In this document: piece after piece, positions 1,309 through 60,852 of the stretch | How the letters are laid out: each line of letters begins with the position of its first letter | How positions within the stretch are numbered: position 1 is the first letter of the stretch | NCBI GenBank assembly: GCA_002269645.1 | Contig: NIVC01000302.1 | Location: forward strand, 564,303-628,302 | Source: Macrostomum lignano | Taxonomy: Eukaryota | DNA: 64,000 nt | Direction of reading: 5' to 3' | Notes under the pieces: model-generated | Database searches by the model: none | Seen by the model: the letters and a program-made list of their open reading frames with translations, nothing else | What the model was told of the DNA's origin: nothing | Made by a program: the position numbers and the translations under genes

Positions 1309-1848
1309 TCACAGCGCGGTGATCTGGCAGGCCGGGCCCTGTCCGCTGATGTCACAGTTGTCCAACAGCAGACGCTGCGCCGCCCGTCCGGACACGTCCG
1401 AGTCCGAGTCCGAGTTCCGCTTGCGACTGGCGCCGCCGCCCACGGCTGACACGGCCGTAGCGGCTCGCTCCATCTCGGCCTCATCGGAGCGTCCGGGCTG
1501 CTGCTGCGGCTGCTGCTGCCTGCGGCCGCCAGCTTTGGCTCCGCGCTGCTGGCAGAAAGTCGGGAACTGCTTGGCTATGGCGGCCCTGAACGAGCCGCTC
1601 AGCATGGAGTACACGATGGGGTTCACGCAGCAGGAGGCATAGTGCAGAGCGGTGGCGCAGATCTTCACCACCAGCATGGCGTTGCTGAATGGGAAAGTGT
1701 GCCGGAGCACGTGGTACCAGAAATTGATCAGCTCGGTGGGGAACCAGCAGATGCCGTATAGTGACGTCACCACCATCACCATCTTCGTCACTTTGGTGCG
1801 CTGACGGCGCTTGTTCTCGCGGCGCTTGTCCGAGCTGGCCTTGGAGTC
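1309..1848 (-). CDS. GPCR exon 4 (ICL3, TM6, TM7, C-tail with polyQ)
   Basis: ATCCCAG|DSKASSDKRRENKRRQRTKVTKMV...CWFP...NPIVY...stop. Confidence 0.9.
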   Translation of the reverse strand, partial: DSKASSDKRRENKRRQRTKVTKMVMVVTSLYGICWFPTELINFWYHVLRHTFPFSNAMLVVKICATALHYASCCVNPIVYSMLSGSFRAAIAKQFPTFCQQRGAKAGGRRQQQPQQQPGRSDEAEMERAATAVSAVGGGASRKRNSDSDSDVSGRAAQRLLLDNCDISGQGPACQITAL

Positions 1849-4800: not shown

Positions 4801-7800
4801 CTCAGTAATGGAACTGGGAGACCTGACATCAGTTCTGACACTTCTAATGTACAAGTTCTGACGCTACTCCTGACACTAATTCCGGTGCTACTCCTGACAA
4901 TAGTTCTGGGGCTACTCCTGACACTAGTTCCTGGGCTACTCCTGACACTAGTTCTGGGGCTACTCCTGACACTAGTTCTGGTGCTACTGACACTAGTTTT
5001 GGCTCCTGACACTAGTTCTGGGGCTACTCCTGACACTAGTTCTGGTGCTACTGACACTAGTTTTGGCTCCTGACACTAGCTTCTCCTGACACTAAATTTA
5101 CTTCTGGCGCTACTCCTGACACAAATGGAAGTGTGTCTGATACAGTTGACTCAATATCGATAAATTTGTCAATTTGCCTAAAGTCCTAAAATGATAGCAG
5201 ATCATGCAGAAAAACATTTAGCAATCATAAAGCGTGGTGCGCAGTGTTTAGAAAACTCCAATCGACTGTGCAGTCATAAATTATCGTCACAGATATTGCG
5301 CATTTATTGTTTATTATTTACTGTTCCGGCTTAAAAAATAGGGAGCAGGAATTGACTAATTGGAAAATCGAGGCACTTCTGTCGGGGACAAGGCCTGATT
5401 TATGGCATTCGCCCTCCTCCCTATCCGCCTCTCTTTCTTCCCCCAAGTCAGCCACGAGCGATCCAAGGACCACCTCGAATCAGTAACCTGGACTGCTGAC
5501 TCATGCCCGGATCCCCGTGTTAAGCCACTTTAGCTATGTTCTCGTAGACACTTAACTCAGCGACTCCCCCATGGCAACTCAGCGACTCCACCATGGCAAC
5601 TCAGCGACTCCCCCATGCATCTCAGCAACTCCCCCATGGCATCTCAGCAACTCCCCCATGGCATCTCAGCAACTCCCCCATGCATCTCAGCAACTCCCCC
5701 ATGGCATCTCAGCAACTCCCCCATGGCATCCCAGCAACTCCCCCATGGCATCTCAGCAACTCCCCCATGCATCTCAGCAACTCCCCCATGGCATCTCAGC
5801 AACTCCCCCATGGCATCCCAGCAACTCCCCCATGGCATCCCAGCAACTCCCCCATGGCATCTCAGCAACTCCCCCATGGCATCCCAGCAACTCCCCCATG
5901 GCATCCCAGCAACTCCCCCATGGCATCTCAGCAACTCCCCCATGCATCTCAGCAACTCCCCCATGGCATCTCAGCAACTCCCCCATGGCATCCCAGCAAC
6001 TCCCCATTGGCATCCCAGCAACTCCCCCATGGCATCTCAGCAACTCCCCCATGGCATCCCAGCAACTCCCCCATGGCATCCCAGCAACTCCCCATTGGCA
6101 TCCCAGCAACTCCCCCATGGCATCCCAGCAACTCCCTCATGGCATCTCAGCAACTCCCCCATGGCATCTCAGCAACTCCCCCATGGCATCCCAGCAACTC
6201 CCCATTGGCATCCCAGCAACTCCCTCATGGCATCTCAGCAACTCCCCCATGGCATCTCAGCGACTCCCCCATGGCATCCCAGCAACTCCCCCATGGCATC
6301 TCAGCAACTCCCCCATGCATCTCAGCAACTCCCCCATGGCATCTCAGCAACTCCCCCATGGCATCCCAGCAACTCCCCCATGGCATCCCAGCAACTCCCC
6401 CATGGCATCTCAGCAACTCCCCCATGGCATCCCAGCAACTCCCCCATGGCATCCCAGCAACTCCCCCATGGCATCTCAGCAACTCCCCCATGCATCTCAG
6501 CAACTCCCCCATGGCATCTCAGCAACTCCCCCATGGCATCCCAGCAACTCCCCATTGGCATCCCAGCAACTCCCCCATGGCATCTCAGCAACTCCCCCAT
6601 GGCATCCCAGCAACTCCCCCATGGCATCCCAGCAACTCCCCATTGGCATCCCAGCAACTCCCCCATGGCATCCCAGCAACTCCCTCATGGCATCTCAGCA
6701 ACTCCCCCATGGCATCTCAGCAACTCCCCCATGGCATCCCAGCAACTCCCCATTGGCATCCCAGCAACTCCCTCATGGCATCTCAGCAACTCCCCCATGG
6801 CATCTCAGCGACTCCCCCATGGCATCTCAGCAACTCCCTCATGGCATCTCAGCAACTCCCCCATGGCATCTCAGCAACTCCCTCATGGCATCTCAGCAAC
6901 TCCACCATGGCAACTCAGCAACTCCCCCATGGCATCTCAGCAACTCCCCCATGGCATCTCAGCAACTCCCTCATGGCATCTCAGCAACTCCCCCATGGCA
7001 TCCCAGCAACTCCCCCATGGCATCTCAGCAACTCCCCCATGGCATCCCAGCAACTCCCCCATGGCATCTCAGCAACTCCCCCATGGCATCCCAGCAAATC
7101 CCCCATGGCAACTCAGCGACTCCCCCATGCATCTCAGCAACTCCCCCTTGGCATCTCAGCAACTCCCCCCTTGGCATCTCAGCGACTCCCCATTGGCATC
7201 TCAGCAACTCCCCCATGGCATCCCAGCAACTCCCCCATGGCATCTCAGCAACTCCCCCATGGCATCCCAGCAACTCCCCCATGGCATCTCAGCAACTCCC
7301 TCATGGCATCTCAGCGACTCCCCCATGGCATCTCAGCAACTCCCCCATGGCATCCCAGCAAATCCCCCATGGCAACTCAGCGACTCCCCCATGCATCTCA
7401 GCAACTCCCCCATGGCATCTCAGCAACTCCCCCATGGCATCTCAGCAACCCCCATGGAATCTTAGCAACCCCCATCTCAGCAACTCTCCATGGCAACTAC
7501 AAATCTATTTGGCTTTTTAAAATCGCTTTGAGCTTGTTAAAAAAAAGGTGTTGAGTAATATTTTCAGTCCAGATTTTGACTTTGGGTGTCCTTGAGCGCT
7601 GCTAGGACGAGGCGGCACAAAACCTCTGCCTCCCCCCGCCCCCAACCAGCATGGCTCAGTCAATCGGGCGATTTCCTACAGGCCGTGGCTTCGAACTATT
7701 CGATCGCAACCTACGCTGCAGTTGTTGGCTCACTATGCTAATCTCGCCGCCAGAGATAAACTACGATTGATAGACAGATGGGATAAAAGAATATTGCAGA

Positions 7801-10800
7801 GCAACTTTCATAACGCCCACACACTAAGGGCTCAAAGTCTAGTAACCCGCCTCATTGATTTCCAGATAGAGACGAGAGTCAACATAGCCGACTCTGTGTC
7901 GGTTAATAAGCCCGTCTAGCTTTATCTGTCGCTGATTATTCCCAGCTTCTTTCATCTGCATCTTTCAGCTGTAATTAGCTGGTTGCCCCCACCGCCCACC
8001 ACTTGTAAATCCAGTGCTAGTGGGCTTGACAAAGTCTCTGGCTTAACTGCCTCGGCCAGGCAATTAAGCTCCACCTGACGCTAATCTCACTATTGCCCAC
8101 TTTCTCTTTTTGTTTGCCACGCCCTAAATTTCCCCAGCTCGCCTAATCCCCTTTCACTTTGTCCTAGGTTAGCTCAATTCAAACTGGCCAGATTGACAGG
8201 GAGGGGATTGCAACTGAAGTTGAGCTCCGGTATCGATTTCAGTGCAGCTGCAGCCTTCTTGTCAGTCCGGGGGGGGGCGAGTCGGACTTTTCAAGAGAAA
8301 GCTGTAGTGCTATTTTTCTAACATTTTTTCCTGTCAGCAGAGGTCTTTTTGTTTTTTTCAAGTCACTTTCCCCAATATGGCGGCAGGTATAACTTGATTA
8401 TCAACTGCATAAAATGATGTTGGACGGCTAATTGGCAACCAATACAGAGGAAGGGGAAATTAAAATGAGAAGAAGGGGAAAGGAATAGGAAGCGGAAGGG
8501 AAAAGGAAGCGGAAGGGAAAAGGAAGCGGAAGGGAAGAGGAAGCGGAAGGGAAGAGGAAGCGGAAGGGAAAAGGAAGCGGAAGGGAAAAGGAAGCGGAAG
8601 GGAAAAGGAAGCGGAAGGGAAAAGGAAGCGGAAGGGAAAAGGAAGCGGAAGGGAAAAGGAAGCGGAAGGGAAAAGGAAGCGGAAGGGAAAAGGAAGCGGA
8701 AGGGAAAAGGAAGCGGAAGGGAAGAGGAAGCGGAAGGGAAGAGGAAGCGGAAGGGAAAAGGAAGCGGAAGGGAAGAGGAAGCGGAAGGGAAAAGGAAGCG
8801 GAAGGGAAGAGGAAGCGGAAGGGAAGAGGAAGCGGAAGGGAAGAGGAAGCGGAAGGGAAGAGGAAGCGGAAGGGAAGAGGAAGCGGAAGGGAAGAGGAAG
8901 CGGAAGGGAAGAGGAAGCGGAAGGGAAGAGGAAGCGGAAGGGAAGAGGAAGCGGAAGGGAAGAGGAAGCGGAAGGGAAGAGGAAGCGGAAGGGAAGAGGA
9001 AGCGGAAGGGAAGAGGAAGCGGAAGGGAAGAGGAAGCGGAAGGGAAGAGGAAGCGGAAGGGAAGAGGAAGCGGAAGGGAAGAGGAAGCGGAAGGGAAAAG
9101 GAAGCGGAAGGGAAGAGGAAGCGGAAGGGAAGAGGAACAAAGAGAGAGAAGACGAACAATAATGAAAGGGGAAGGAAAGAGAAAAAGAGAGAAACAGGAA
9201 AGGGAGAAAACCCAAGTCAATGCTTTCCAAAATATTCACAGTGGTGACCCCCAGTTGAAAATGTCACAACAAACGAGACCAGAGCTCACAGATCCAAGCC
9301 ACCAGACAGGCGATTTTGGCTCTGGCGGGATTGATTTTCCGGTTCTCCCACGGGTGAACAACGGCCAGGAAGCGGCTGCTCGTGAGGCCCAGCAGCATGG
9401 TGGCGGAGGACACCACCGTCATCTGGAATTGGCGGGCGGCGGTGATTGAAAGAGAATGGGTTGTCCAGAAAACTAATTTTCATGAACTGAGTCAAACTTT
9501 CACAGACTTTCACAAACCTTCACAGACCATCCTGGGACCATCGCAGACTTTCACAGATCTTCATTGATCTTTATCACTGACCTTCACTGACCTTCCCAAA
9601 CCTTCACAGATCCCTCACTCATATACCTTCATAAACATTTACAGACCTTTACAAACTTCACAAACCTTCAGACCACCACATACCTTCAAAGACCTTCTTC
9701 ACAAACCTTCATAAACCTTCCCAAATTTTCACGCCAAAATTCACAGACTTTCTTCATATACCCTAATAAACATTCACAAACCTTCATATACCTTTAAAAA
9801 CTTCACAAACCTTTACAAACCTTCCGATACCTTCACATACCTTCACAAACCACCACATACCTTCACAGACCACCACATACCTTCACAGACCACCACATAC
9901 CTTCACAGACCACCACATACCTTCACAGACCACCACATACCTTCACAGACCACCACATACCTTCACAGAGCACCACATACCTTCACAGACCACCACATAC
10001 CTTCACAGAGCACTACATACCTTCACAGAGCACCACATACCTTCACAGACCACCACATACCTTCACAGAGCACCACATACCTTCACAGAGCACCACATAC
10101 CTTCACAGACCACCACATACCTTCACAGACCACCACATACCTTCACAAACCACCACATACCTTCACAGACCACCACATACCTTCACAGAGCACTACATAC
10201 CTTCACAGAGCACCACATACCTTCACAGACCACCACATACCTTCACAGAGCACCACATACCTTCACAGACCACCACATACCTTCACAGACCACCACACCT
10301 TCACAGACCACCACATACCTTCACAGAGCACCACATACCTTCACAGACCACCACATACCTTCACAGAGCACTACATACCTTCAAAGACCTTCTTCACAAA
10401 CCTTCACACATCCTTACAGACCTTCACAGACTTTCAAAGACCTTCGCAGTGCTGGAGTGACGCCCCATCTAAACCGTGCTATCGAAGCATTAATCTGGAT
10501 CAATGGTCCGAAACTGAATAAGACCGAAATCCCAGCAAAATGCACTCCGAGCAGCCTAATTCTTATCTTATCTCGGCTGGACTGAAAAGTCAGCTCAAAA
10601 CCAAGCTCGGGGTAGCAACGGGAGAAGAGAAAATGAGTCGCACTTCAACTCAACGCGACCACCCGATTGAATATGCTGCTTCTCCTCGGACAGAAAACGG
10701 CAGCGAGAGTTCGATCAGACCTTCGGGCGATAGCGCCTCATCTCAATTTCGAGCTACTAGACCTAGAGAGAAAAGTTGAAGAGTGAGCTTATACAGAACT

Positions 10801-12743
10801 GGGCTATGGGGTTCCAGCTAGAGGCAGAACGTCAATCCAAAATCCGCTTTTTTGCTCTGAATAAGCTAAGGACCGGCTCAAGCGGCCGATGAAAGATGAA
10901 GAACGGACCGAAAGAGACTGCAGCTGGGCCTTGTCACCGGCTGCCCCAGAGATGGTAATAAGTGCTGACAAGCGGGGGCAGCCTCCGCGCAGAGAGTCGG
11001 GGGTGGCCATGGAGGCAGTGTTTCGCGCTACGCATTCCAAAAAAATCATAACCACCTTTATTTCTCATTCTCCCTGTCCCCCGGAGCCAAAGTTGCCCTC
11101 TGTTTTTTCTTGTTTTCTACCCCGCTGAAGACCTGGTAAGCTCACCCGGCAAGCCTCTCTTTAGCCTGCTACTATGCAAGTGCATTCATTCCAGCTTGTC
11201 CGCTTTTAAGCGATTTCTGTTTCCATCTCTGCCTGGGCCAGAGCTACAAATATTTCGATTTATCAATGCCCCACGCGAATTGCTAAGCCGCTCTGAGTCC
11301 TGCAGTCCCTCTCCCGCGTGTGTACCGTAGCTTTTTCTATTTCTAAACTTCACTCTCTGCTACTCTCCCTCACTCTCTGCTACTCTCCCTCACTCTCTGC
11401 TACTCTCCCTCACTCTCTGCTACTCTCCCTCACTCTCTGCTACTCTCCCCCACTCTCTGCTACTCTCCCTCACTCTCTGCTACTCTCCCTCACTCTCTGC
11501 TACTCTCCCCCACTCTCTGCTACTCTCCCCCACTCTCTGCTACTCTCCCTCACTCTCTGCTACTCTCCCCCACTCTCTGCTACTCTCCCTCACTCTCTGC
11601 TACTCTCCCCCACTCTCTGCTACTCTCCCCCACTCTCTGCTACTCTCCCTCACTCTCTGCTACTCTCCCTCACTCTCTGCTACTCTCCCTCACTCTCTGC
11701 TACTCTCCCCACTCTCTGCTACTCTCCCCCACTCTCTGCTACTCTCCCTCACTCTCTGCTACTCTCCCCCACTCTCTGCTACTCTCCCTCACTCTCTGCT
11801 ACTCTCCCCCACTCTCTGCTACTCTCCCCCACTCTCTGCTACTCTCCCCCACTCTCTGCTACTCTCTTTCGGCCGATTGCCTAAAAGTGAGCCTATCCCC
11901 AGCATAAAAGTGAGCTCTTGAATTGGAGTACTCGGTACCCCCGATTCCCAGAAATGGAGACAGAAGCAGCTGAGCAAAGGAGCAGTTGAGAACACAGCAA
12001 GTCAATCAAGACTAGCATTGTACACACAACCAACAATATAGCTTGTTATGCAGTCCAGCCAGGGTTCAGTGGGTTGGACCGCCAGCTCACAAGCGTTGGT
12101 AAAAGTTTAGCACAGGATTACTCGTAGAATAGAATCAAGTTAAGTTTTTTTGCCACATTTGACCAGTCCGCTGGGCTCCTCGGGGGAGCGTTCTGGCATT
12201 AAACTTTCATAGCGACAAGAGCATAGCAAGGCATGTACCGGAGGCTATTGGGGGGGGGGGGCGGAGCTGAGTGTATGCTCACAGACTTGGCTTCCCAGGA
12301 GTTTCCCAAGTTGCAAACCAATTTGGTGATTTAATTCAATTTCTGTGGCCCTCGGAGTGGCGGCAGCGGGTTCGATTCGCTTCTCACACTTTGCAGTCAG
12401 ATTCGGATTTGGTTAGCTCTTCGAATTTACGGTCCAGATAACGCAGAGTCCTGCTTTCTTAGAAACGCATAGTGCCTACTTCCTGGAGTACTTCTTTTGC
12501 ACTTGATTGAATGCATTTTGCTTGTGTATTACAAATAAAAACACGGTAGGCCTTTCATAGAGATCTAGTAGCTCTCTAGAGACGTCTGAGGTTTCTAAGA
12601 AATCAGCAATAGGTTTCTTAGAAACACGCATGAATTCCTTCACATTTCTTAGAAATAAGCAATAGGTTTCTTTGAGACAGAATTTCTTAAATTTTTTTCG
12701 AAATCTATTACAAAAACTATTCTAAAGACAACAAAGAAGTTTT

Positions 12744-12777
<34 letters not shown>

Positions 12778-14851
12778 CACAGCTTTCTTAGAAACGCATA
12801 GTGCCTACTTCCTGGAGGGGTGATGCTATTACTTCTTTTGCACTTGATTGAATGCATTTTGCTTGTGTATTGCAAATAAAAACATGGAAGGCCTTTCATA
12901 GAAATCTAGTGGCTCTCTAGATGCGTCTGAAGTTTCTTAGAAATCAGCAATAGTTTTCTTAGAAACACGCGCATGAATTCCTGTACGTTTCTTAGAAATC
13001 AGCCATAAGTTTTTTAGAAACACGCATGAATTCATGTACGTTTCTTAGAAACCAGCAATTTTTTTCTTAGAAACACGCATGAATTCCTGTACATTTCTTA
13101 GAAAGCATCAATAGTTTTCCTAGAAACACGCATGACTTTCTTGACAATTCTTAGAAACCCATTTTTAAAATATTCTAAAGAAAAAAAGAAGTTTTGAGAG
13201 AGAGAAGCGCAGCTTTCTTAGAAAGTGTTGATTCTTTTCATGAGTTTCTTGTACAAGTACTTAGTAGTGCCATGGCCAAAATGCAAGAACCAAGATGCAT
13301 TAGCAAGATTAGAATGTTTGATTTTCTATAGCACTGAATTCCCAAAATAACACCTTTTGAACTTTCGATATACGAATGAAGCAAGTTATGTCAGAGGTTG
13401 TTGCAGAGCTTAAAATACAACAATGTTTTATAAATGAGAGCATTTTTGGACAGCGCTGAAAGGTGTTCCGCCATGTACCTAATGGATTGAGAGAAAACAC
13501 ACTAAAGAGATTGCTTCACCTGTGTCCGTTTAACTTCAACAAAACCCGCATTCTATTTGGACAAGCTGACATTCGAGTTTTTTTAAATTGAAGGTGACCC
13601 AAAAGGTGTAGAATTTAATGAGAAAAATATCTAGTGCTATAATATACCAGCCCGTAGTCCATAAGTAAGGTATAGAAATGCGGGATTATCTTTCATAGAA
13701 CTCTGCCTTCTATTGAAATCACTGCACGCTCGTAAGAAATCGTGACTTTTGCCTTAGAGATAAACTCACGAAGATTTATTTTGGAATGGCTCGATCTTTA
13801 AGAAAAATTTTAATCTTCTCTGCATGCGGAAAATAATTTGAAACATATTTTTGCTGCAGCATCGCGGGGTGGAGCAGCTCAATGTCGGTCGAGTTCTGAA
13901 ATATTTTCTCAATCCTTACCCAAAATGTTTGTAAACCGCGAGGAAGTGTCTCCAAATATATGTAGATATTTCTGATTATCAGAGAGTCGAAAGCTTCAAA
14001 TATTGAAAATGTTCAAAAAACCTTCTATTCATTATGCGGGACGTTGAATTTCAGAAATTTCAGGGATTTTCCTGTTTTTATAGTAAAAATTATGGTTGAT
14101 GGCACCTGCCCTATTGGGCAGATGTGCAACCGACAGCTCAGCCGCAGCTATTGCGCGGCGCATCTGAAGGCTGCGTACGGCTGTTCAGTCCAAGGACTGG
14201 GAGGTCGTCACACACAGCCTCAATTACCCCAGCTAATGCTGGCACCCATTTTACAGCTGGGTGAACTGAAGCAATGCAGAGTTAAGTGGTCAGCGGAATG
14301 AGCAGAAATTGCCGCCAGCGCTGTTTGCGGGAGGATTTCGCCGAAAGCGTTGGGCCAGGATTCCCACTGCCCTTGCTGCGAATGCTTATATTTATTCACT
14401 CCTGTGTACTGCCAAAGGTATCCAAAATACAACTGAAAATCGTGTTAGAAAACCTGAACAAGTCCCATCACGCCAGCGGTCTCTGATGCATGTGGTTTTG
14501 GAGTTAGTCAACTTAGTAAATCGCACTCACATTAACTACAAAGAAGGTGAACTTGCACATCACGGATCCGAGTAGCCAGGAGTCCATCACGTACTGCAGG
14601 GTGGTGATGGGCACCGTGAGCGTCAGGAAGATCAGATCCGTGATGGCCAGGCCGGTACAGAAGATCTCGTACACCTGCTTGCTCTCGTTTCGGAGGAGCA
14701 CCACCAGCACGAAGACATTGGCCAGAATGCCGACAATGTCCACGCTGATGAACAGGCCGACAGCCAGCAGCAGGAACGGGTCGCTCTGTCGGGTTTGATT
14801 AGCAAAGCTGTCGTTATCGACACTCGACAGGCTCGAGACGGTGGTTGCCAT
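1309..14851 (-). CDS. Class A (rhodopsin-like) neuropeptide GPCR, galanin/allatostatin-A receptor-like; 4 coding exons, 397 aa
   Basis: Exons 14851-14531, 9422-9290, 4766-4567, 1848-1309 join in frame (phases 0,1,0; 1194 nt) with GT..AG introns. Motifs: TM1 GILAN, TM2 LAITDL, TM3 C...SRFLAVVHP, TM4 AW..GA..SIP, ECL2 Cys, TM5 FSYVLP, TM6 CWFP, TM7 NPIVY, helix 8 SFR. Subfamily is a recalled resemblance, not a search result. Confidence 0.92.
1849..2430. repeat. 36-bp minisatellite CTGGGATTGGGGAAAAGTGGATTGCTAGTCTGTGCT (GPCR intron 3)
   Basis: About 16 copies; the terminal copy supplies the exon 4 acceptor. Confidence 0.95.
2993..3275. repeat. 11-bp minisatellite TTTGTGAATGG
   Basis: About 25 copies. 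Confidence 0.95.
4183..4535. repeat. ~30-bp G-rich minisatellite GCCAGCCCCAAAGTGACTGAGGGGGAGGGGAG
   Basis: About 11 copies next to the GPCR exon 3 donor. Confidence 0.9.
4567..4766 (-). CDS. GPCR exon 3 (TM4-ECL2-TM5)
   Basis: TTTGCAG|(F)GAIVSIPNP...YVCQD...FSYVLPFFAIVVMNCLIVRKLKRE|GTGAGA. Confidence 0.9.
4855..5120. repeat. 24-bp minisatellite CTCCTGACACTAGTTCTGGGGCTA
   Basis: About 10 copies. Confidence 0.9.
5555..7490. repeat. 22-bp minisatellite GCAACTCCCCCATGGCATCTCA
   Basis: About 1.9 kb; source of three spurious >600-aa ORFs. Confidence 0.95.
8478..9137. repeat. 17-bp purine-rich minisatellite GGAAGCGGAAGGGAAGA/AAA
   Basis: About 38 copies. Confidence 0.95.
9290..9422 (-). CDS. GPCR exon 2 (TM3-ICL2-TM4); not in the ORF track
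   Basis: TTCCAG|MTVVSSATMLLGLTSSRFLAVVHPWENRKINPARAKIACLVAWI|GTGAGC. Confidence 0.9.
9490..10430. repeat. 20-bp minisatellite CTTCACAGACCACCACATAC with degenerate ACCTTCACA flanks
   Basis: Homogeneous core about 9835-10380. Confidence 0.9.
11349..11868. repeat. 20-bp minisatellite TACTCTCCCTCACTCTCTGC
   Basis: About 26 copies. Confidence 0.95.
12450..13225. repeat. Local ~200-bp duplication plus degenerate TTCTTAGAAA-based repeat and (GA)n
   Basis: 12455-12650 recurs at about 12783-13000, separated by (GA)n. Confidence 0.8.
14085..14380 (-). mobile_element. CORE-SINE-like (MIR-core-like) fragment in GPCR intron 1
   Basis: 14245-14288 CCCATTTTACAGCTGGGTGAACTGAAGCAATGCAGAGTTAAGTG resembles the recalled MIR core CCCATTTTACAGATGAGGAAACTGAGGC...GGTTAAGTG; hairpin CTGCCC-TATT-GGGCAG near 14105 at the putative tail; tRNA head not clear. 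Confidence 0.55.
14531..14851 (-). CDS. GPCR exon 1 (N-terminus, TM1, TM2, start of TM3)
   Basis: MATTVSSLSS...CKFTFFVVN, then donor GTGAGT. Confidence 0.9.
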
Positions 14852-15357
14852 GGGGGAGAGTTGCTCTACTGCAGGATGGCTGGAGTCAGTTCGGGACAGT
14901 GGGGGCAGCGCGGAGGTCTGCCCGATGCCGTGGGTTTTTACTTGGCTGACGGACCAATCAGGACAGAGCAGCTGGGATTCCCTCTGGCACCGACTGCTGA
15001 CTGGCTGATTGAGTAGTACAAGAGTTCATTAGGACACAGAAATCCTCGCTCAACTTTTTCTTCCTTTAATTTACTGCCAATCGAAGCTCCCTTCTCCATT
15101 CGCCTACGCAAGGTTCACGATCCCCTTTGAATGCTTCCCCTGTCGGCCGTTCGAGCTCAAAGATTCCTTAATTACTCATCTTCTCTGCTCTATTATCTCT
15201 GTCTTTGTCTCGAAGCCCAAAAAAATCTTGTCGGTTATGAGCATTCACGGGCAGTTAAGAGCGAACTGCAGTGAATCAAATTAATTGTCAATTTTCCAGC
15301 TACTAAGCTGCCGCACCAGTCACTTTTCTTTGTGAGTACTTTAATAGGGTGAACATC

Positions 15358-15947
15358 TCCCAATGCAGAGTCCATCTTTCTCATGGCTTGATCTGCTCCT
15401 ACCGATGCAGAGTCCATCTTTCTCATGGCTTGATCTGCTCCTGCCGATGCAGAGTCCATCTTTCTCATGGCTTGCTCTGCTCCTGCCGATGCAGAGTCCA
15501 TCTTTCTCATGGCTTGATCTGCTCCTGCCGATGCAGAGTCCATCTTTCTCATGGCTTGCTCTGCTCCTGCCGATGCAGAGTCCATCTTTCTCATGGCTTG
15601 CTCTGCTCCTCCCAATGCAGAGTCCATCTTTCTCATGGCTTGATCTGCTCCTCCCAATGCAGAGTCCATCTTTCTCATGGCTTGATCTGCTCATCCCGAT
15701 GCAGAGTCCATCTTTCTCATGGCTTGATCTGCTCCTCCCAATGCAGAGTCCATCTTTCTCATGGCTTGCTCTGCTCCTCCCAATGCAGAGTCCATCTTTC
15801 TCATGGCTTGATCTGCTCATCCCGATGCAGAGTCCATCTTTCTCATGGCTTGATCTGCTCCTCCCGATGCAGAGTCCATCTTTCTCATGGCTTGCTCTGC
15901 TCCTCCCAATGCAGAGTCCATCTTTCTCATGGCTTGATCTGCTCCTC
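15358..15947. repeat. 42-bp minisatellite GATGCAGAGTCCATCTTTCTCATGGCTTGATCTGCTCCTGCC
   Basis: About 14 copies. Confidence 0.95.
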
Positions 15948-16779
15948 ATTACTCGTACACACAGTCCTCACTTTTCAAGCGCTCAATTGTAAACGCAATA
16001 CTTACAATTTAACGATCTTAAATCTCCATAAAAATGCGTTGATGCAGCTCAAGCGCTCCTTGAACCATCACAATATGCAGTAACTGCCGGCCACCGTAAA
16101 CCTCTCAGACAATATTGATAATAAAAATACGAAATAGGCACAAGCTGAATAACAATACATGTAGCCTGCTGAAGTAGCAAAATGCAAAGATTGCAAGCAA
16201 TCAAGTTGTAAAAAGAGAGTAACAGTCATACAGGAATAGCACTTTGCCTACTTTAGTCTGAGCACACTGACTATCAAATCGATGTTGAACTTTATAGTCA
16301 TCAATCATCTTGCAGCACCTGAAAGGATGAAGCGCCTGCACGGCGCTCCCAGCCTCCCCCCTCTCTCTCCCACATCTCTCGCGCTCTTTCCTTCCGCAAC
16401 AGAGCTGGCGGCAAACAAAACTCCCAGAACCCGTCACAGCAGCATCACGGAGTCGCCATCCGGCCAGGCAGCTGACAGGCCCCCGACCCAATCCCAGGCT
16501 TTCCGTCCGGCCCTGTCACCTCTGACCCGCTGGCCAGGGACTTCGCAATAAGTGTTGTCATGACAACAAGAAGTCCCTCCGTGCAGTATAAATCTATGCG
16601 CAACTTATTCTCAATGAAAATCGATGCATCCAATCAATTTGTTTCGATGCACTAAATTGTACGCAATGGATGAAAGTAAAATTAGGTGAAGTAATTTAGG
16701 CGTAAGAAGGAATTGGGAAGCCTATGGTTTGCAAAAGTTGATGCTAGACACTACAGCAGAGGTATTATATTATTATGCG

Positions 16780-17445
16780 TATAGACAGACACTGAGACAC
16801 ACAGACAGACACCGAGACACACAAAGAAAGACACCGAGGCACACAAGACACCGAGAGACAAAAAGACAAAAACCGAGACACACAAAGACAGACATCGAGA
16901 CACACAAAGACAGACATCGAGACACACAAAGAAAGACACCGAGGCACACAAGACACCGAGAGACAAAAAGACAAAAACCGAGACACACAAAGACAGACAT
17001 CGAGACACACAAAGACAGACATCGAGACACACAAAGACAGACATCGAGACACACAAAGACAGACACCGAGACACACAAATAAAGACATCGAGACACACAA
17101 AGGCAGATACTGAGACACACAAATAAAGACACCGAGACACACAAATAAAGACATCGAGACACACAAAGGCAGACACCGAGACACACAAATAAAGACACCG
17201 AGACACGCAAAGACAGACACCGAGACACACAAATAGACACAGAGACACACAAAGACAGACACAGAGACACACAAAGACAGACACAGAGACACACAAAGAC
17301 AGACACAGAGACACACAAAGACAGACACAGAGACACACAAAGACAGACACAGAGACACACAAAGACAGACACAGAGACACACAAAGACAGACACAGAGAC
17401 ACACAAATAGACACAGAGACACGCAAAGACAGACACCAAGACACA
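16780..17445. repeat. 22-bp minisatellite GACACACAAAGACAGACACAGA
   Basis: About 30 copies. Confidence 0.9.
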
Positions 17446-18384
17446 TACGAGCTATAGAATGTGCTTCAGCCGTTCGCAAGCAAGTATTCTATCTCAGATT
17501 CTCACAACATGGTCCGCATAAAAGTACAAACGAAAAAAGCAGGAATTTCCTATTTCCAAAATTCACCTGAGCGCAATTCATCATATCGCAGGTGTGACGT
17601 CATATTCTATTTAATTATAGACTAGCCTTCGAGAAACAATTTCAACACTAGAAGGCCCTTGTGGAGGCAGAAAAGGCAGTGGTTGATTCCGATAGACACT
17701 CGGCAGGCAGTGAGGGCTTCATTAGCCAGGAATTAGTGGCCGAATCGCGCATACAGATCTAGCAGTGTCCGATCCGCCCACATGCTTCATAACTGAGAGG
17801 CCTCCACTCAAAGACAGACTGCCAATTAATACCGTAGAAGCTTGAATTGTCCAGTTTGAGCTCGAGTTGAGAGACAGAAGGGGGAGCTGAGCAGCCCGTC
17901 ACCAGCTGAGTCCGCCTCCGAATGTGTGTTAGATTGCTTCTACATCTCTAGGAAATGCGATATCCGGCAAGCAGATTCTGAGAAATCGCCCGCAGATGGC
18001 GCCCAGTTCTGTCAGTTCCACCGCCGAAAAAAAAATAAATGAACAAGAAAAAGACACTGAGCCAAAATCTACATTTTACTAAATTTGCATATCAGTGGGA
18101 GAAAGATGGAACTGGCTCTGCTGCTGCATCCGATTGAGAAATGTCTGTTGCACAGATTCCCGCTAAACAGCATGGCTGCCGCTGATGGGCAGCAAGAGGA
18201 ACTGCTAGCTAAAAAGACAAGATTAGAGATTTTCTTCTTCTTCTTCTTGTTACTTTCGGCAGGCAGATGCTATCTCAATCCGTCAGTGCCAAAATCTCCG
18301 CGGAAGCAGCCACTGACTGAATCCGGGAAGCGGAAGTCGAATGCACTTCTGATGAACGTCAGGACATTGCTATATCAAGCTCGT

Positions 18385-19582
18385 GTGAGGCTGGCCCAGC
18401 AACTGAAGATCTGGGAGGCTGGCCCAGCAACTGAGGATCAGGGAGGCTGGCCCAGCGACTGAGGATCTGGGAGGCTGGCCCAGAGACTGAGGATCTGGGA
18501 GGCTGGCCCAGCGACTGAGGATCTGGGAGGCTGGCCCAGCGACTGAGGATCTGGGAGGCTGGCCCAGCAACTGAGGATCTGGGAGGCTGGCCCAGCAACT
18601 GAGGATCTGGGAGGCTGGCCCAGCAACTGAGGATCTGGGAGGCTGGCCCAGCAACTGAGGATCAGGGAGGCTGGCCCAGCGACTGAGGATCTGGGAGGCT
18701 GGCCCAGCGACTGAGGATCTGGGAGGCTGGCCCAGCAACTGAGGATCTGGGAGGCTGGCCCCAGCAACTGAGGATCTGGGAGGCTGGCCCCAGCAACTGA
18801 GGATCTGGGAGGCTGGCCCAGCAACTGAGGATCTGGGAGGCTGGCCCCAGCAACTGAGGATCTGGGAGGCTGGCCCAGCAACTGAGGATCTGGGAGGCTG
18901 GCCCCAGCAACTGAGGATCTGGGAGGCTGGCCCAGCAACGGAGGATCTGGGAGGCTGGCGGTGGCCCAGCAACTGAGGATCTGGGAGGCTGGCGGTGGCC
19001 CAGCAGCTGAGGATCTGGGAGGCTGGCGGTGGCCCAGCAACTGAGGATCTGGGAGGCTGGCCCAGCGACTGAGGATCTGGGAGGCTGGCCCAGCAACTGA
19101 CACTCTGGGAGGCTGGCCCAGCAACTGACACTCTGGGAGGCTGGCCCAGCAACTGACACTCTGAGAGGCTGGCCCAGCAACTGACACTCTGGGAGGCTGG
19201 CCCAGCAACTGACACTCTGGGAGGCTGGCCCAGCAACTGAGGATCTGGGAGGCTGGTAGCACACCAACTGAGGAGTCTGGGAGGCTGGCCCAGCAACTGA
19301 CACTCTGGGAGGCTGGCCTAGCAACTGACACTCTGGGAGGCTGGCCCAGCAACTGACACTCTGGGAGGCTGGCCCAGCAACTGACACTCTGGGAGGCTGG
19401 CCCAGCAACTGAGGATCTGGGAGGCTGGCCCAGCGACTGAGGATCTGGGAGGCTGGCCCAGCGACTGATGATCTGGGAGGCTGGCCCAGCAACTGAGGAT
19501 CTGGGAGGCTGGCCCAGCAACTGAGGATCTGGGAGGCTGGCCCAGCGACTGAGGATCTAAGAGGCAGGCCCAGCAACTGAGG
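18385..19582. repeat. 28-bp minisatellite CTGAGGATCTGGGAGGCTGGCCCAGCAA (array A)
   Basis: About 42 copies in variant domains. Confidence 0.95.
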
Positions 19583-19857
19583 CGTATAACTGAAGTACGC
19601 AAGTGCGACGTTTATTTGCACATTTTGTCCCAATTCACTCAGTAAATAGTCGTTACAATCCTTACGGACAATTTTTTAAGTAACAAATACCGAAAATGAA
19701 CACAGAATCATTTGCTTTTCAATTTCTTGGGCTTTGAGAAATGCATGGCTGCAATGGCATATTAGTTATGGTATATTTGCAGAGCGCAAAGTTAAGCTGA
19801 AACTTGGCGACAGCCAAAACAGATTCTAGCAACTGAGTCTGCTAAGCTGTCAATCAA

Positions 19858-21317
19858 TCAATCAATGTCATCAGGTGTCTCCTCCAGGCCGTAATCCAGC
19901 TTTGTTGCCTCTGTCTCATTTAGTTCTGAAGTGATAATTATTCAAAAATGTACTCAAAAAGGAGTTGAGAGGGCGATTCTCAAAGGGCGATTCTAAAGTG
20001 CGATTTTCAAAGGGCGATTCTAAAGTGCGATTCTCAAAGGGCGATTCTCAAAGGGCGATTCTCAAAGGGCGATTCTCAAAGGGCGATTCTCAAAGGGCGA
20101 TTCTCAAAGGGCGATTCTCAAAGGGCGATTCTCACAGGGCGATTCTAAAGTGCGATTCTCAAAGGACGATTCTCAAAGGGCGATTCTCACAGGGCGATTC
20201 TAAAGTGCGATTTTAAAGAGCGATTCTCAAAGGGCGATTCTCAAAGGGCGATTCTCACAGGGCGATTCTAAATAGCGATTCTCAAAGGGCGATTCTCAAA
20301 GGGCGATTCTCACAGGGCGATTCTAAAGTGCGATTCTCAAAGGACGATTCTCAAAGGGCGATTCTCACAGGGCGATTCTAAAGTGCGATTTTAAAGTGCG
20401 ATTCTCAAAGGGCGATTCTCAAAGGGCAATTCTCACAGGGCGATTCTAAATAGCGATTCTCAAAGGGCGATTCTCAAAGGGCGATTCTAAAGTGCGATTC
20501 TCAAAGGACGATTCTAAAGAGCGATTCTCAAAGGGCGATTCTCAAAGGGCGATTCTCAAAGGGCGATTCTAAAGAGCGATTCTCAAAGGGCGATTCTCAA
20601 AGGGCGATTCTAAAGTGCGATTTTAAAGAGCGATTCTCAAAGGGCGATTCTCAAAGGGCGATTCTAAAGAGCGATTCTCAAAGGGCGATTCTCAAAGGGC
20701 AATTCTCACAGGGCGATTCTAAATAGCGATTCTCAAAGGGCGATTCTCACAGGGCGATTCTAAAGTGCGATTTTAAAGAGCGATTCTCAAAGGGCGATTC
20801 TCAAAGGGCAATTCTCACAGGGCGATTCTAAATAGCGATTCTCAAAGGGCGATTCTCACAGGGCGATTCTAAAGTGCGATTTTAAAGAGCGATTCTCAAA
20901 GGGCGATTCTCAAAGGGCGATTCTCAAAGGGCGATTCTCAAATGGCGATTCTAAAGAGCGATTCTCAAAGGGCGATTCTCAAAGGGCGATTCTAAAGAGC
21001 GATTCTAAAGTGCGATTCTAAAGAGTGATTCTCAAAGGGCGATTCTCAAAGGGCGATTCTCAAAGGGCGATTCTCAAAGGGCGATTCTCACAGGGCGATT
21101 CTCACAGGGCGATTCTAAAGTGCGATTGTCAAAGTGCGATTCTCAATTGAAACCCACCTTTTGACAGCATAGCGTTAACATCCTGCTGAATAGCCCGACA
21201 GTTCTCGATGACCTTCTTGTAGTCGCAGGCGCCCTGGTCATCGCCAATGACGCGGTCCAACTTTTTAACAGCATCTGAGCCGGAGTTCAGCGAGATGCTG
21301 ATCTGAACTGCCGACAT
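19858..21317 (-). CDS. Small 2-exon gene, 75-aa protein, tentatively GON7-like (KEOPS/EKC subunit)
   Basis: Exon 21317-21158 (MSAVQISISLNSGSDAVKKLDRVIGDDQGACDYKKVIENCRAIQQDVNAMLSK, donor AG|GTGGGT) splices in phase 1 to exon 19925-19858 (acceptor TCACTTCAG; ELNETEATKLDYGLEETPDDID*). The exons are non-repetitive islands between arrays. Gene existence is better supported than the family call. Confidence 0.6.
19968..21145. repeat. 14-bp minisatellite GCGATTCTCAAAGG (intron of the GON7-like gene)
   Basis: About 80 copies. Confidence 0.95.
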
Positions 21318-21367
21318 TGCAGCAGTTCCGGATGGGAAGGATTAGTGAGGGTTTCGATGGGAGATTA

Positions 21368-22270
21368 GATAGCGATTCTAGATAGGTGATTCTAGATAGG
21401 TGATTCTAGATGGGTGATTCTAGATAGGTGATTCTAGATGGGCGATTCTAGATAGGTGATTCTAGATGGGTGATTCTAGATAGGCGATTCTAGATAGGCG
21501 ATTCAAGATGGGATATTCTAGATGAGTGATTCTAGATGGGTGATTCTAGATGGGAGATTCTAGATGGGAGATTCTAGATAGGAAATTCTAGATGGGCGAT
21601 TCTAGATGGGCGATTCTAGATGGGAGATTCTAGATGGGCGATTCTAGATGGGCGATTCTAGATGGGCGATTCTAGATGGGAGATTCTAGATGGGAGATTC
21701 TAGATGGGCGATTCTAGATGGGCGATTCTAGATGGGCGATTCTAGATGGGCGATTCTAGATGGGAGATTCTAGATGGGCGGTTCTAGATGGGCGATTCTA
21801 GATGGGCGATTCTTGATGGGCGATTCTAGATGGGCGATTCTAGATGGGCGATTCTAGATGGGCGATTCTAGATGGGCGATTCTACATGTAGATGGGCGAT
21901 TCTAGATAGGTGATTCTAGATGGGTGATTCTAGATGGGCGATTCTAGATGGGCGATTCTACATGTAGATGGGTGATTCTAGATGGGAGATTCTAGATGGG
22001 AGATTCTAGATGGGAGATTCTAGATGGGAGATTCTAGATGGGGGATTCTAGATGGGAGATTCTAGATGGGAGATTCTAGATGGGCGATTCTAGATGGGAG
22101 ATTCTAGATGGGCGATTCTAGATGGGAGATTCTAGATGGGAGATTCTAGATGGGAGATTCTAGATGGGCGATTCTAGATGGGCGATTCTAGATGGGGGAT
22201 TCTAGATGGGTGATTCTAGATGGGTGATTCTAGATGGGTGATTCTAGATGGGTGATTCTAGATGGGTGAT
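21368..22270. repeat. 14-bp minisatellite GCGATTCTAGATGG
   Basis: About 64 copies; shares GGGCGATTCT with the previous array. Confidence 0.95.
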
Positions 22271-22661: not shown

Positions 22662-22992
22662 GGCTGAGGATCTGAGAATCTGGGAGGCTGGCCCAGCAAC
22701 TGAGGATCTGGGAAGCTGGCCTAGCAACTGACACTCTGGGAGGCTGGCCCAGCAACTGAGGATCTGGGAAGCTGGCCTAGCAACTGAGGATCTGGGAGGC
22801 TGGCCCAGCAACTGAGGATCTGGGAAGCTGGCCTAGCAACTGAGGATCTGGGAGGCTGGCCCAGCAACTGAGGATCTGGGAGGCTGGCCCAGCAAGCGAG
22901 GATCTGGGAGGCTGGCCCAGCAACTGAGGATCTGGGAGGCTGGCCCAGCAAGCGAGGATCTGGGAGGCTGGCCCAGCAACTGAGGATCTGGG
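22662..22992. repeat. 28-bp minisatellite, same family as 18385-19582 (array B)
   Basis: About 12 copies, same orientation. Confidence 0.95.
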
Positions 22993-23624: not shown

Positions 23625-52481
<28,857 letters not shown>

Positions 52482-53189: not shown

Positions 53190-54060
53190 AATGTCAGATT
53201 CCGAATGCACAATGGACCAAGGTTGGTTGTGATCTGCTGGACTTCAATGGCGACAACTGGCTATTAGTCGAATTACCCGCTATTACAGCAACTGGATCGA
53301 ACTGGCAAAGTTATAGATCAACAGTCTGGAGCTCAGGTGATTGCTCGCATAAAGTCGATGTTCGCCAGGTTCGTTATCGTCGAAGAACTGATCAGTGATA
53401 ATGGTCTCCCATTCAGCTGGTTTAAGTTTCAAGAGTTTTTTGCTGCACAGTTTGGTTTCGTGCACACGCGCTCGTCCGGATATGCACAATTCAAAGGGAT
53501 GGCTGAGAAGGCAGTCAAACAGGCAAAGAATATCCTGAGGAAGTCCTATCAGCCCGAAATTGCGCTAATGGAATATCCAGCTTCACCAATTAGCGTGATA
53601 CGAGCACCAGTCCCAGCGAGCTGATCATGCTCGGTCGCTTGATTCGGACGAAGCTGCCAGCATATGAGAAGGCGCTGCTAAAAGACAGAACTTACAAGAA
53701 GGGAAACGGATTCTCCAAAGCCCCGCTGCAGGCTGCTAAAAAACGGAACTACTACCAGCAAGCTTGACCGCTCTCTTGATCAATACTGATTCGACAGGCC
53801 GGGAAATGCAGTTCGTTTTCGGCACCCGGTTTCAGATGGGGAGCCAGCTGTAGTGACGCAAGCCGACCTGGATCATCCGCACCTACCGACTGCTGACTCA
53901 AAGCGGCAGGGAGCTGATTCGCAATCGCCAGGGCCTCAGCAGTCCACTGCTGAGGCCGAAGAAGTACAGTTAGAGCGGCCCAGGCGGCTCCGGCCGGCGA
54001 TGAATCGGCGGCATCAGATTTGCCTGGAGAGCCACTGCGCCGCTCTGCTAGGGCCACCCA
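53190..54060 (+). pseudogene. Decayed Ty3/Gypsy LTR-retrotransposon integrase (rve) and pol C-terminus
   Basis: Frameshifted blocks WTKVGCDLLDFNG..WLLV and IARIKSMFARF..VEELISDNG.PF...GFVHTRSSGYAQFKGMAEKAVKQAKNIL match the DDE integrase core pattern; stops and frameshifts present. Confidence 0.85.

Positions 54061-58647: not shown

Positions 58648-60852
<2,205 letters not shown>

What the first reader, a model, noticed from the sequence alone, without database searches (positions are those of the whole stretch)
19858..21317. Hidden 75-aa microprotein with a GON7 (KEOPS fifth subunit)-like layout
Seen: two short unique exons buried between arrays splice cleanly into MSAVQISISLNSGSDAVKKLDRVIGDDQGACDYKKVIENCRAIQQDVNAMLSKELNETEATKLDYGLEETPDDID. 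The layout is strand-Gly turn-strand, then an amphipathic helix, then an acidic tail. The helix IQQDVNAMLS resembles the recalled yeast Gon7 LQDDINEFLT. Established: GON7 is a fast-evolving KEOPS (t6A tRNA modification) subunit best known from fungi and vertebrates. Inference: a divergent invertebrate ortholog that gene finders would miss. Caveat: the 55 nt before the ATG look like an AG-free branch region, so the first exon could be internal.
Basis: partly seen in the sequence, partly recalled or inferred. Interest (0 to 1): 0.72.

Follow-up and report, generated by a model that had tools for sequence, protein, structure and literature searches.

The report
Small flatworm gene, database-named GON7
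The two short exons are a real, selected gene of the flatworm Macrostomum lignano that is already in GenBank and that UniRef already calls GON7, but none of my tests could confirm that it is the fifth subunit of the KEOPS tRNA-modification complex.

Summary
On the minus strand, ATG 21317 to 21158, a 1232-nt intron that is almost entirely a 14-nt tandem array, and 19925 to TGA 19858 give the quoted 75-aa protein.

The gene is real. A second genomic copy has the same architecture and differs by 8 synonymous and 1 non-synonymous change (dN/dS 0.03, P = 4e-5).

It is not hidden. Window 9858-31308 is 100% identical to GenBank NIVC01000302.1 of Macrostomum lignano. The gene is BOX15_Mlig031083g1, from an annotation built on RNA-seq. 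UniRef already names the identical protein 'EKC/KEOPS complex subunit GON7'.

I could not reproduce that identity:
- Neither Pfam family (PF15387, PF08738) gives a hit.
- Profile and pairwise scores are no better than shuffled sequences. Human versus yeast GON7, which are true structural homologues, fail these tests too, so the tests lack power.
- Single-sequence AlphaFold2 finds the GON7 beta-hairpin in a primate control but not in this protein.

What does fit is the size, pI 4.3, an amphipathic helix and an acidic tail.

Verdict: a real, already annotated microprotein gene. I put GON7 identity at about 0.5. Interest is low.

The parts
21158..21317 (-). Exon 1 coding part (M1 to first base of codon 54), 160 nt
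   Evidence: Translation. There are 8 synonymous and 1 non-synonymous differences from homeolog L001. It lies within GenBank CDS PAA85882.1, which starts at 21308.
19926..21157 (-). Single intron, 1232 nt, GT...AG. Its interior (19970-21146) is an 86-copy 14-nt tandem array (unit AGGGCGATTCTCAA on the + strand).
   Evidence: The homeolog has the same array in the same intron but only about 494 nt of it.
19858..19925 (-). Exon 2 coding part (rest of codon 54 to D75, then TGA): the acidic tail
   Evidence: It is identical in the homeolog L001.
19595..19857 (-). 3' UTR with the AATAAA poly(A) signal at 19616-19611. The 3' end coordinate is approximate.
   Evidence: It aligns with the homeolog at 3.7% mismatch and the AATAAA is conserved. 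The end was not mapped.
21318..21377 (-). Unique 5' flank, 63% pyrimidine, AG-free, with CTCACTAAT branch-like motifs and an in-frame TAA 27 nt before the ATG. It is a putative 5' UTR or the end of an outron.
   Evidence: It is conserved in L001 (3 of 54 mismatches), where a CAG lies 2 nt before the ATG.
21372..22270 (.). Upstream 14-nt tandem array (GCGATTCTAGATGG, about 63 copies). It shares the core GCGATTCT with the intron array.
   Evidence: The same array lies upstream of the homeolog.
18387..19582 (.). Downstream 28-nt tandem array (about 42 copies) that abuts the 3' end of the gene. The same unit recurs upstream at 22672-22992.
   Evidence: The same array follows the homeolog.

Best explanation
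This is the Macrostomum lignano gene BOX15_Mlig031083g1. It is a two-exon gene whose exons sit as unique islands between satellite arrays. It encodes a 75-aa acidic microprotein (8.2 kDa, pI 4.3) kept under strong purifying selection. All of that is shown.

The following is inferred. The leading reading is that it is the flatworm counterpart of GON7/C14orf142. On that reading it is disordered alone. Its N-terminal ~50 residues (VQISISL - NSGSD - AVKKLDRVI, then the amphipathic helix Y33-K53) fold onto Pcc1/LAGE3 at the Pcc1 dimer surface. This would cap KEOPS as a monomeric five-subunit complex and stabilise it. The acidic tail (54-75) would stay free near the tRNA.

Expression probably involves spliced-leader trans-splicing at the end of the AG-free tract. 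This too is inferred.
For: Evidence that the gene is real:
- The coordinates and splice signals are as described.
- dN/dS is 0.03 and P is 4e-5 against a homeolog with the same architecture.
- The window is 100% identical to GenBank NIVC01000302.1, which carries a CDS at this locus.
- That annotation derives only from RNA-seq and transcriptome evidence (PMC5730564).

Evidence for GON7:
- UniRef names the identical 75-aa protein 'EKC/KEOPS complex subunit GON7'.
- Size, pI 4.27 and net charge resemble human GON7 (pI 4.08) and yeast Gon7 (pI 4.72).
- The C-terminal tail has 9 of 22 acidic residues and low pLDDT. This matches the conserved acidic disordered tail of GON7 (PMC8565320).
- A confident long helix starts at residue 33 (pLDDT 83-90). 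That is the same position as the helix in the primate control, which starts at residue 29.
- hhalign's own human-yeast equivalence (DMVTELF with DDINEFL) puts the Mlig stretch QDVNAML in the same register.
- GON7 is known to be undetectable by sequence between fungi and animals (PMC9889334).
- From memory, not tested: the conserved neighbour is an EML5/6-like gene, and human EML5 and GON7 both lie on 14q31-q32.
Against: - No Pfam hit to PF15387 or PF08738 for any of the three M. lignano copies, while the human, marsupial and yeast controls hit at 1e-26 to 1e-43.
- hhalign against 23 mammalian GON7 sequences gives probability 0.09%.
- An HMM of 98 mammalian GON7 sequences scores the protein at -0.5 bits, rank 432 of 502 among its own shuffles.
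- Smith-Waterman scores against human and yeast are not above shuffles.
- Exhaustive phmmer over 1.84 billion representatives finds only M. lignano copies.
- Single-sequence AlphaFold2 gives no beta-hairpin: residues 1-30 have pLDDT 47-55 and a weak helix at 15-26. Foldseek against the PDB gives 0 hits.
- The same procedure on a primate GON7 gives E2-8, E14-20 and H29-57 and retrieves 9fl9_E and 6gwj_D.
- The basis of the UniRef name cannot be seen. The sibling copy, which differs by one residue, is 'Uncharacterized protein'.
- C. elegans KEOPS has only four subunits, and Drosophila has no known Gon7.
Confidence: 0.5

Rival explanations
1. It is a lineage-restricted (Macrostomum or flatworm) orphan microprotein unrelated to KEOPS. 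It would be a small acidic helical protein whose likeness to GON7 is only generic (short, acidic, one amphipathic helix). The UniRef name would then be an over-reaching automatic label.
For: - No homologue outside M. lignano in 1.84 billion representative proteins.
- No family hit in Pfam.
- No similarity to GON7 above shuffles.
- AlphaFold2 predicts helix-loop-helix rather than hairpin-helix, where the GON7 control succeeds.
- The nearly identical sibling protein is left 'Uncharacterized' by the same source.
Against: - A rare and specific name was attached to the exact sequence by a public source.
- The size, pI, helix position and acidic tail all fit GON7.
- The negative sequence tests also fail on a true GON7 pair.
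- The AlphaFold2 model has low confidence over residues 1-30, so it is closer to no prediction than to a contrary one.
Confidence: 0.42
2. Exon 1 is an internal exon of a longer coding gene (for example the EML-like gene upstream), so the 75-aa reading is only a fragment.
For: - There is a 68-nt AG-free pyrimidine-rich tract before and over the ATG, with the first AG at 21309.
- The GenBank CDS at this locus is 5'-partial and starts at 21308.
- The EML-like gene lies on the same strand and ends about 2.3 kb upstream.
Against: - An in-frame TAA lies 27 nt upstream, with no AG between it and the ATG.
- The homeolog's public model is complete and starts at the same ATG.
- The EML model is a complete 1993-aa protein with its own end.
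- In M. lignano about 30% of genes receive a spliced leader at such acceptors (PMC8629364). That explains the tract without needing an upstream coding exon.
Confidence: 0.05
3. It is a chance ORF or non-coding transcript between satellite arrays.
For: It is short (75 codons), about half of the region is tandem arrays, and there are no homologues.
Against: - 8 synonymous against 1 non-synonymous difference, P = 4e-5, and frame-specific.
- Conserved splice sites and poly(A) signal in the homeolog.
- Transcript-based gene models at both loci.
Confidence: 0.03

Closest known systems
Metazoan GON7 / C14orf142 (Pfam PF15387; human structures 6GWJ chain D and 9FL9)
   Same: - It is a small acidic protein (75 against 100 aa; pI 4.3 against 4.1).
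- A long amphipathic helix begins near residue 30.
- The C-terminal tail is acidic and has low confidence.
- A public source gives it the same name.
   Different: - No PF15387 match and no profile or pairwise similarity.
- The N-terminal hairpin is not predicted, where the primate control predicts it.
- The tail is much shorter (22 against 50 residues).
- The conserved mammalian motifs (MEL..EY, C21, the C-terminal SAKRPK) are absent.
Fungal Gon7 (Pfam PF08738; yeast structures 4WX8 and 4WXA)
   Same: - The helix motif is similar: Mlig IQQDVNAMLS against yeast LQDDINEFLT, and also yeast IQEEINQLLD.
- The C-terminus is acidic.
- The protein is expected to be disordered alone.
   Different: - No PF08738 match.
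- Smith-Waterman score 30, reached or exceeded by 27% of shuffles.
- Yeast Gon7 has a ~40-residue disordered insert between hairpin and helix, plus a second helix. Both are absent here.
Archaeal Pcc2 (the Pcc1 paralogue that acts as fifth KEOPS subunit)
   Same: If this protein is a GON7, it has the same proposed role: capping the Pcc1 dimer surface so that KEOPS stays monomeric.
   Different: Pcc2 has the Pcc1 fold (three strands and two helices) and recognisable Pcc1 homology. Nothing of that kind is seen here.

Membership tests
Metazoan GON7 / C14orf142 (PF15387) | Significant match to the family profile | tested here: not met
   No Pfam hit at E <= 10 for P0001, P0003 or P0106, and none is precomputed. 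Controls: human 7e-43 and marsupial 1e-26. The profile is dominated by vertebrates, so its power for a flatworm is unknown.
Metazoan GON7 / C14orf142 (PF15387) | Profile-profile or HMM similarity to bona fide GON7 sequences | tested here: inconclusive
   hhalign probability is 0.09%. The HMM of 98 mammalian sequences gives -0.5 bits, rank 432 of 502 shuffles. Yeast Gon7, a proven structural homologue, also fails: 1.0 bit and probability 0.24%.
Metazoan GON7 / C14orf142 (PF15387) | Structured N-terminal ~50 residues made of two antiparallel strands plus one helix (PMC8565320) | tested here: inconclusive
   Single-sequence AlphaFold2 gives a helix at 33-62 with pLDDT up to 90. There is no hairpin: residues 1-30 have pLDDT 47-55 and a weak helix at 15-26. 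Foldseek gives 0 hits. The primate control gives E2-8, E14-20 and H29-57 and hits 6gwj_D. The result leans negative, but the model has low confidence and no alignment was available.
Metazoan GON7 / C14orf142 (PF15387) | Acid-rich, disordered C-terminal tail in a small acidic protein | tested here: met
   The tail 54-75 has 9 D/E and 1 K. pLDDT there is 53-57. The whole protein has pI 4.27. This feature is generic and not specific to GON7.
Metazoan GON7 / C14orf142 (PF15387) | Binds Pcc1/LAGE3 at its dimerisation surface and co-purifies with KEOPS | not testable with these tools
Fungal Gon7 (PF08738) | Significant match to the family profile or to yeast Gon7 | tested here: not met
   No PF08738 hit, while the yeast control hits at 5e-43. 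Smith-Waterman against yeast scores 30, with 27% of shuffles at least as high.
Spliced-leader trans-spliced genes of M. lignano | [quoted passage not shown] | tested here: inconclusive
   The AG-free tract is followed by CGGCAG (exon start 21307) and GTTCAG (exon start 21302). The public 5'-partial model starts at 21308. Each acceptor matches the motif at 5 of 6 positions. No reads were available.

The most novel reading that the evidence does not exclude
The protein is a genuine platyhelminth GON7. That would show that the fifth KEOPS subunit was present in the bilaterian (at least spiralian) ancestor and was lost or replaced in nematodes and flies. Its helix motif is closer to the fungal Q-D-D-I-N-x-F-L than the mammalian one is, so it would supply a bridging sequence between the two Pfam families that cannot currently be linked by sequence.
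Probability: 0.45. Interest if true: 0.4.

Novelty: already known. Interest (0 to 1): 0.22.

Why it matters
If the GON7 reading is right, this is a data point on how widely the fast-evolving fifth KEOPS subunit occurs in animals. The literature says Gon7 is known only from certain fungi and metazoans. C. elegans KEOPS has four subunits, and Drosophila has no known Gon7. M. lignano has transgenesis and RNAi, so the question is testable there.

As it stands, the gene model and the name are already public, and I add no positive evidence for the function. The practical value is twofold:
- It shows that the automatic name has no reproducible signature behind it.
- It shows that the sequence tests usually proposed for GON7 have no power.

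Tried and rejected
- Pfam scans of all three M. lignano copies: nothing.
- phmmer against PDB sequences: only noise with E > 0.1 (HMG-CoA reductase, Z-DNA-binding domain).
- Word-indexed homologue search: only the protein itself.
- Exhaustive phmmer over 1.84 billion representatives: only M. lignano copies, plus two hits at E about 5e-4 to giant bacterial proteins made of FN3/Ig-type repeats. I rejected these as repeat and composition matches.
- Searches with human GON7 and with a 23-sequence profile: the listed rows were all mammals. Only the best 120 of 174 hits were shown, so no invertebrate GON7 could be obtained to build a broader profile.
- BLASTP, Smith-Waterman with shuffles, hhalign and hmmsearch --max: no signal, and the controls show no power.
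- AlphaFold2 and Foldseek, with controls.
- Looking for spliced transcripts or other contigs by exact protein look-up: nothing on record beyond the two GenBank contigs.
- Supplementary files of the KEOPS and M. lignano papers, searched for invertebrate GON7 sequences or for gene ids Mlig031083 and Mlig011157: nothing.
- Literature search for GON7 in flatworms: nothing relevant.
- Rejected readings: a chance ORF and an N-terminal extension of the ORF.

Full report
**1. What is in the sequence**

On the minus strand an ATG at 21317 opens 160 nt of coding sequence that ends at 21158, followed by the donor AAAAG|GTGGGT. The next 1232 nt are an intron. Positions 19970-21146 of it are an 86-copy array of a 14-nt unit. 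The unique 44 nt before the acceptor read ...TTTTTGAATAATTATCACTTCAG|. Exon 2 runs from 19925 to the TGA at 19860-19858.

An AATAAA lies at 19616-19611, just before a 28-nt array.

**2. Where it comes from**

The 75-aa sequence is already in public databases. It appears as UniRef100_A0A1I8J647, 'EKC/KEOPS complex subunit GON7, n=2, Macrostomum lignano'. Its 90% cluster also holds two GenBank proteins:
- PAA85882.1 (BOX15_Mlig031083g1, 72 aa, 5'-partial)
- PAA76723.1 (BOX15_Mlig011157g1, 75 aa, K34T)

Looking up PAA85882.1 returned contig NIVC01000302.1 of assembly GCA_002269645.1. Window 9858-31308, reverse-complemented, is identical to it over all 21,451 bases. So the window is the published Mlig_3_7 assembly of this flatworm.

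The paper describing that assembly states that the GenBank annotation was built from RNA-seq-guided transcript assemblies (StringTie/TACO, the TBONE boundary pipeline, TransDecoder) and not from ab initio prediction (PMC5730564). The existence of the two gene models is therefore indirect transcript support for the junction.

**3. Is it a real coding gene?**

The second copy (locus L001, NIVC01000799.1) has the same layout:
- the same 14-nt array upstream
- exon 1
- the same array inside a shorter intron of about 494 nt
- exon 2
- a 3' UTR with the AATAAA
- the same 28-nt array downstream

The two coding sequences differ at nine positions. Eight are synonymous third-position changes and one is non-synonymous. 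By Nei-Gojobori, dS = 0.18, dN = 0.006 and dN/dS = 0.03. The binomial P for at least 8 of 9 synonymous is 4e-5. In the other two frames the same changes would be 8:1 and 7:2 non-synonymous, and those frames contain stops. This shows purifying selection on exactly this frame, including the N-terminal half.

**4. The 5' end**

The frame is closed by a TAA 27 nt upstream of the ATG. There is no AG anywhere from 21377 to 21310. So no acceptor can lie between that stop and the ATG, and the ORF cannot be extended.

The tract is 63% pyrimidine and contains CTCACTAAT. The first AGs after it are inside codons 3-7. M. lignano trans-splices a 35-nt leader ending in ...TTGCATG onto about 30% of its genes, at YTNCAG acceptors (PMC8629364).

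The GenBank CDS for this copy is 5'-partial and begins at 21308. That base is the G of the first AG after the tract. In the homeolog, whose model is complete, a CAG lies 2 nt before the ATG. The window copy has CTG there.

My inference, which is not shown, is that the tract is the end of an outron and that the two copies use different leader acceptors:
- If the leader joined at 21307, the leader's AUG would open a 7-codon out-of-frame ORF.
- If it joined at 21302 (GTTCAG|ATC), the leader's AUG would be in frame and give M-ISISLNS..., 71 aa.

Only reads can settle this.

**5. Is it GON7? Sequence tests**

- Pfam holds both relevant families. Human GON7 hits PF15387 at 7e-43, a marsupial GON7 hits it at 1e-26, and yeast Gon7 hits PF08738 at 5e-43.
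- None of the three M. lignano copies hits either family, or anything else, at E <= 10.
- phmmer against all PDB sequences finds no GON7.
- BLASTP against human GON7 finds nothing.
- hhalign against an alignment of 23 mammalian GON7 sequences gives probability 0.09%.
- An HMM of 98 mammalian sequences, run without filters, scores the protein at -0.5 bits, rank 432 of 502 among 500 of its own shuffles.
- Smith-Waterman scores against human and yeast are matched or exceeded by 63% and 27% of shuffles.
- An exhaustive phmmer of 1.84 billion representative proteins finds only M. lignano copies. It also gives two hits at E about 5e-4 to giant bacterial repeat proteins, which I regard as spurious.

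These negatives carry little weight. The same tests fail on a pair known to be structural and functional homologues:
- Human against yeast Smith-Waterman is matched or exceeded by 33% of shuffles.
- Yeast Gon7 scores 1.0 bit against the mammalian HMM.
- Yeast Gon7 gets probability 0.24% in hhalign.

The literature says the same: sequence searches failed to connect fungal Gon7 with C14orf142 (PMC9889334; PMC5314774). I could not obtain invertebrate GON7 sequences for a broader profile.

**6. Is it GON7? Structure test**

Single-sequence AlphaFold2 of the M. lignano protein gives mean pLDDT 64. One confident helix spans 33-62 (pLDDT up to 90). There is a weak helix at 15-26, and residues 1-30 have pLDDT 47-55. 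No hairpin is predicted. Foldseek against the PDB returns nothing.

As a control I ran the same procedure on a primate GON7 (P0005). It gives strands 2-8 and 14-20 with pLDDT 81-85 and a helix at 29-57. Foldseek retrieves 9fl9_E and 6gwj_D, although that is helped by over 90% sequence identity.

So this test has power and the flatworm protein did not pass it. Its N-terminal model is too low in confidence to count as a contrary prediction. GON7 is disordered until it binds Pcc1/LAGE3 (PMC6722078; PMC8565320).

**7. What does fit**

- The protein is small and acidic: pI 4.27, against 4.08 for human and 4.72 for yeast.
- The tail 54-75 has nine acidic residues and one basic residue and is predicted to be disordered. 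The review gives an acidic C-terminus as the conserved hallmark of Gon7 orthologues.
- The confident helix starts where the GON7 helix starts.
- By eye, its hydrophobic positions (Y33, V36, I37, C40, I43, V47, M50, L51) have the same spacing as human F30, L33, L34, V37, M40, V44, L47, F48. That spacing is generic to amphipathic helices.
- hhalign's own human-yeast pairing (DMVTELF with DDINEFL) places the flatworm QDVNAML in that register.
- The UniRef name is the only direct positive evidence. Its basis is invisible here, and the sibling entry that differs by one residue is 'Uncharacterized protein'.

**8. Verdict**

The gene is real, expressed according to a transcript-based public annotation, and selected. 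It is already annotated and already carries the proposed name. Whether it truly is the fifth KEOPS subunit remains open. I put that at about 0.5, against about 0.4 for a lineage-restricted acidic microprotein with only generic likeness.

If it is GON7, the mechanism follows the solved complexes. The N-terminal segment and helix would add to the Pcc1 sheet and helix layer on the face that otherwise makes the Pcc1 homodimer, so KEOPS would stay a five-subunit monomer and be stabilised. The acidic tail would remain free.

Novelty is 'already known', because the model and the name are public. Interest is low.

**9. Surroundings**

About half of the 64 kb lies in more than 35 different tandem arrays. 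Exons of several genes sit as islands between them:
- a rhodopsin-type GPCR on the minus strand (1312-15025)
- an EML5/6-like gene of 1993 aa on the minus strand (about 23625 to beyond 52481)
- an otopetrin-like ORF on the plus strand (56249-58138)

The EML-like gene is the same-strand upstream neighbour of the small gene in both homeologous loci.

Noticed in passing
window 21297-21377 (minus strand); L001 9946-10001: The GenBank CDS of this copy is 5'-partial and starts at 21308, the G of the first AG after a 68-nt AG-free pyrimidine tract. The homeolog has a CAG 2 nt before its ATG and a complete model. The spliced leader ends in ATG. Joined at 21302 it would be in frame (71 aa, M-ISISL...). 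Joined at 21307 it would be out of frame. The two copies may therefore differ in how, or whether, they are translated.
   Followed up: partly
window 23625 to beyond 52481, minus strand (exon ORFs e.g. 52269-52481, 46640-47053, 43848-44198): This is an EML-like gene (HELP motif plus EML beta-propellers; the public model has 1993 aa, the size of EML5/6). It is the same-strand upstream neighbour of the small gene in both homeologous loci. About 1.1 kb of non-array DNA lies between them, close to the 1-kb repeat-adjusted operon threshold used for M. lignano. From memory only: human EML5 (14q31.3) and GON7 (14q32.12) lie a few Mb apart.
   Followed up: partly
window 1312-1872, 4546-4863, 9267-9479, 14516-15025 (minus strand): Four exon-sized ORFs together cover a rhodopsin-family GPCR (PF00001 profile positions 2-67, 65-114, 104-185 and 186-260). 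Its introns are filled with unrelated tandem arrays. No gene was listed for 9858-19857 in the locus returned for the public record.
   Followed up: partly
window 56249-58138 (plus strand): A 630-aa open frame matches Otopetrin (PF03189, 6.8e-13, profile positions 168-434), apparently as one long exon.
   Followed up: no
window 18387-19582 and 22672-22992; 19970-21146 and 21372-22270: The small gene is nested symmetrically. The same 28-nt array lies on both outer sides. Two 14-nt arrays that share the core GCGATTCT flank exon 1, one of them being the intron. The arrangement is conserved in the homeolog with different copy numbers (intron 1232 against about 494 nt). Each intron unit carries a CTTTGAG that looks like a weak acceptor.
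   Followed up: partly
whole window: About 50% of the 64 kb lies in more than 35 distinct tandem arrays (units of 4-120 nt, including 550 copies of GATA at 58648-60852). This is much more than the 15% simple and tandem repeat share reported for the genome as a whole.
   Followed up: no
window CDS and UTRs compared with L001: Synonymous sites differ by 16% (8 of 49.7). The 3' UTR differs by 3.7% and the 5' flank by 5.6%. So the untranslated flanks are better conserved between the homeologs than silent coding sites are. All nine CDS changes are in exon 1 and none is in exon 2.
   Followed up: no
protein P0106 (135 aa, not in the window): This is a further M. lignano version of the protein. Residues 11-22 are frame-shifted (LKLRPQMLLKSM), and after K53 it reads into the translated 28-nt array instead of exon 2. 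It is probably an artefact of an earlier, error-prone assembly or model rather than an isoform.
   Followed up: no
window 53268-53621 (plus strand): An ORF of 118 aa looks by eye like a retroelement integrase fragment, but it has no Pfam hit at E <= 0.01.
   Followed up: partly
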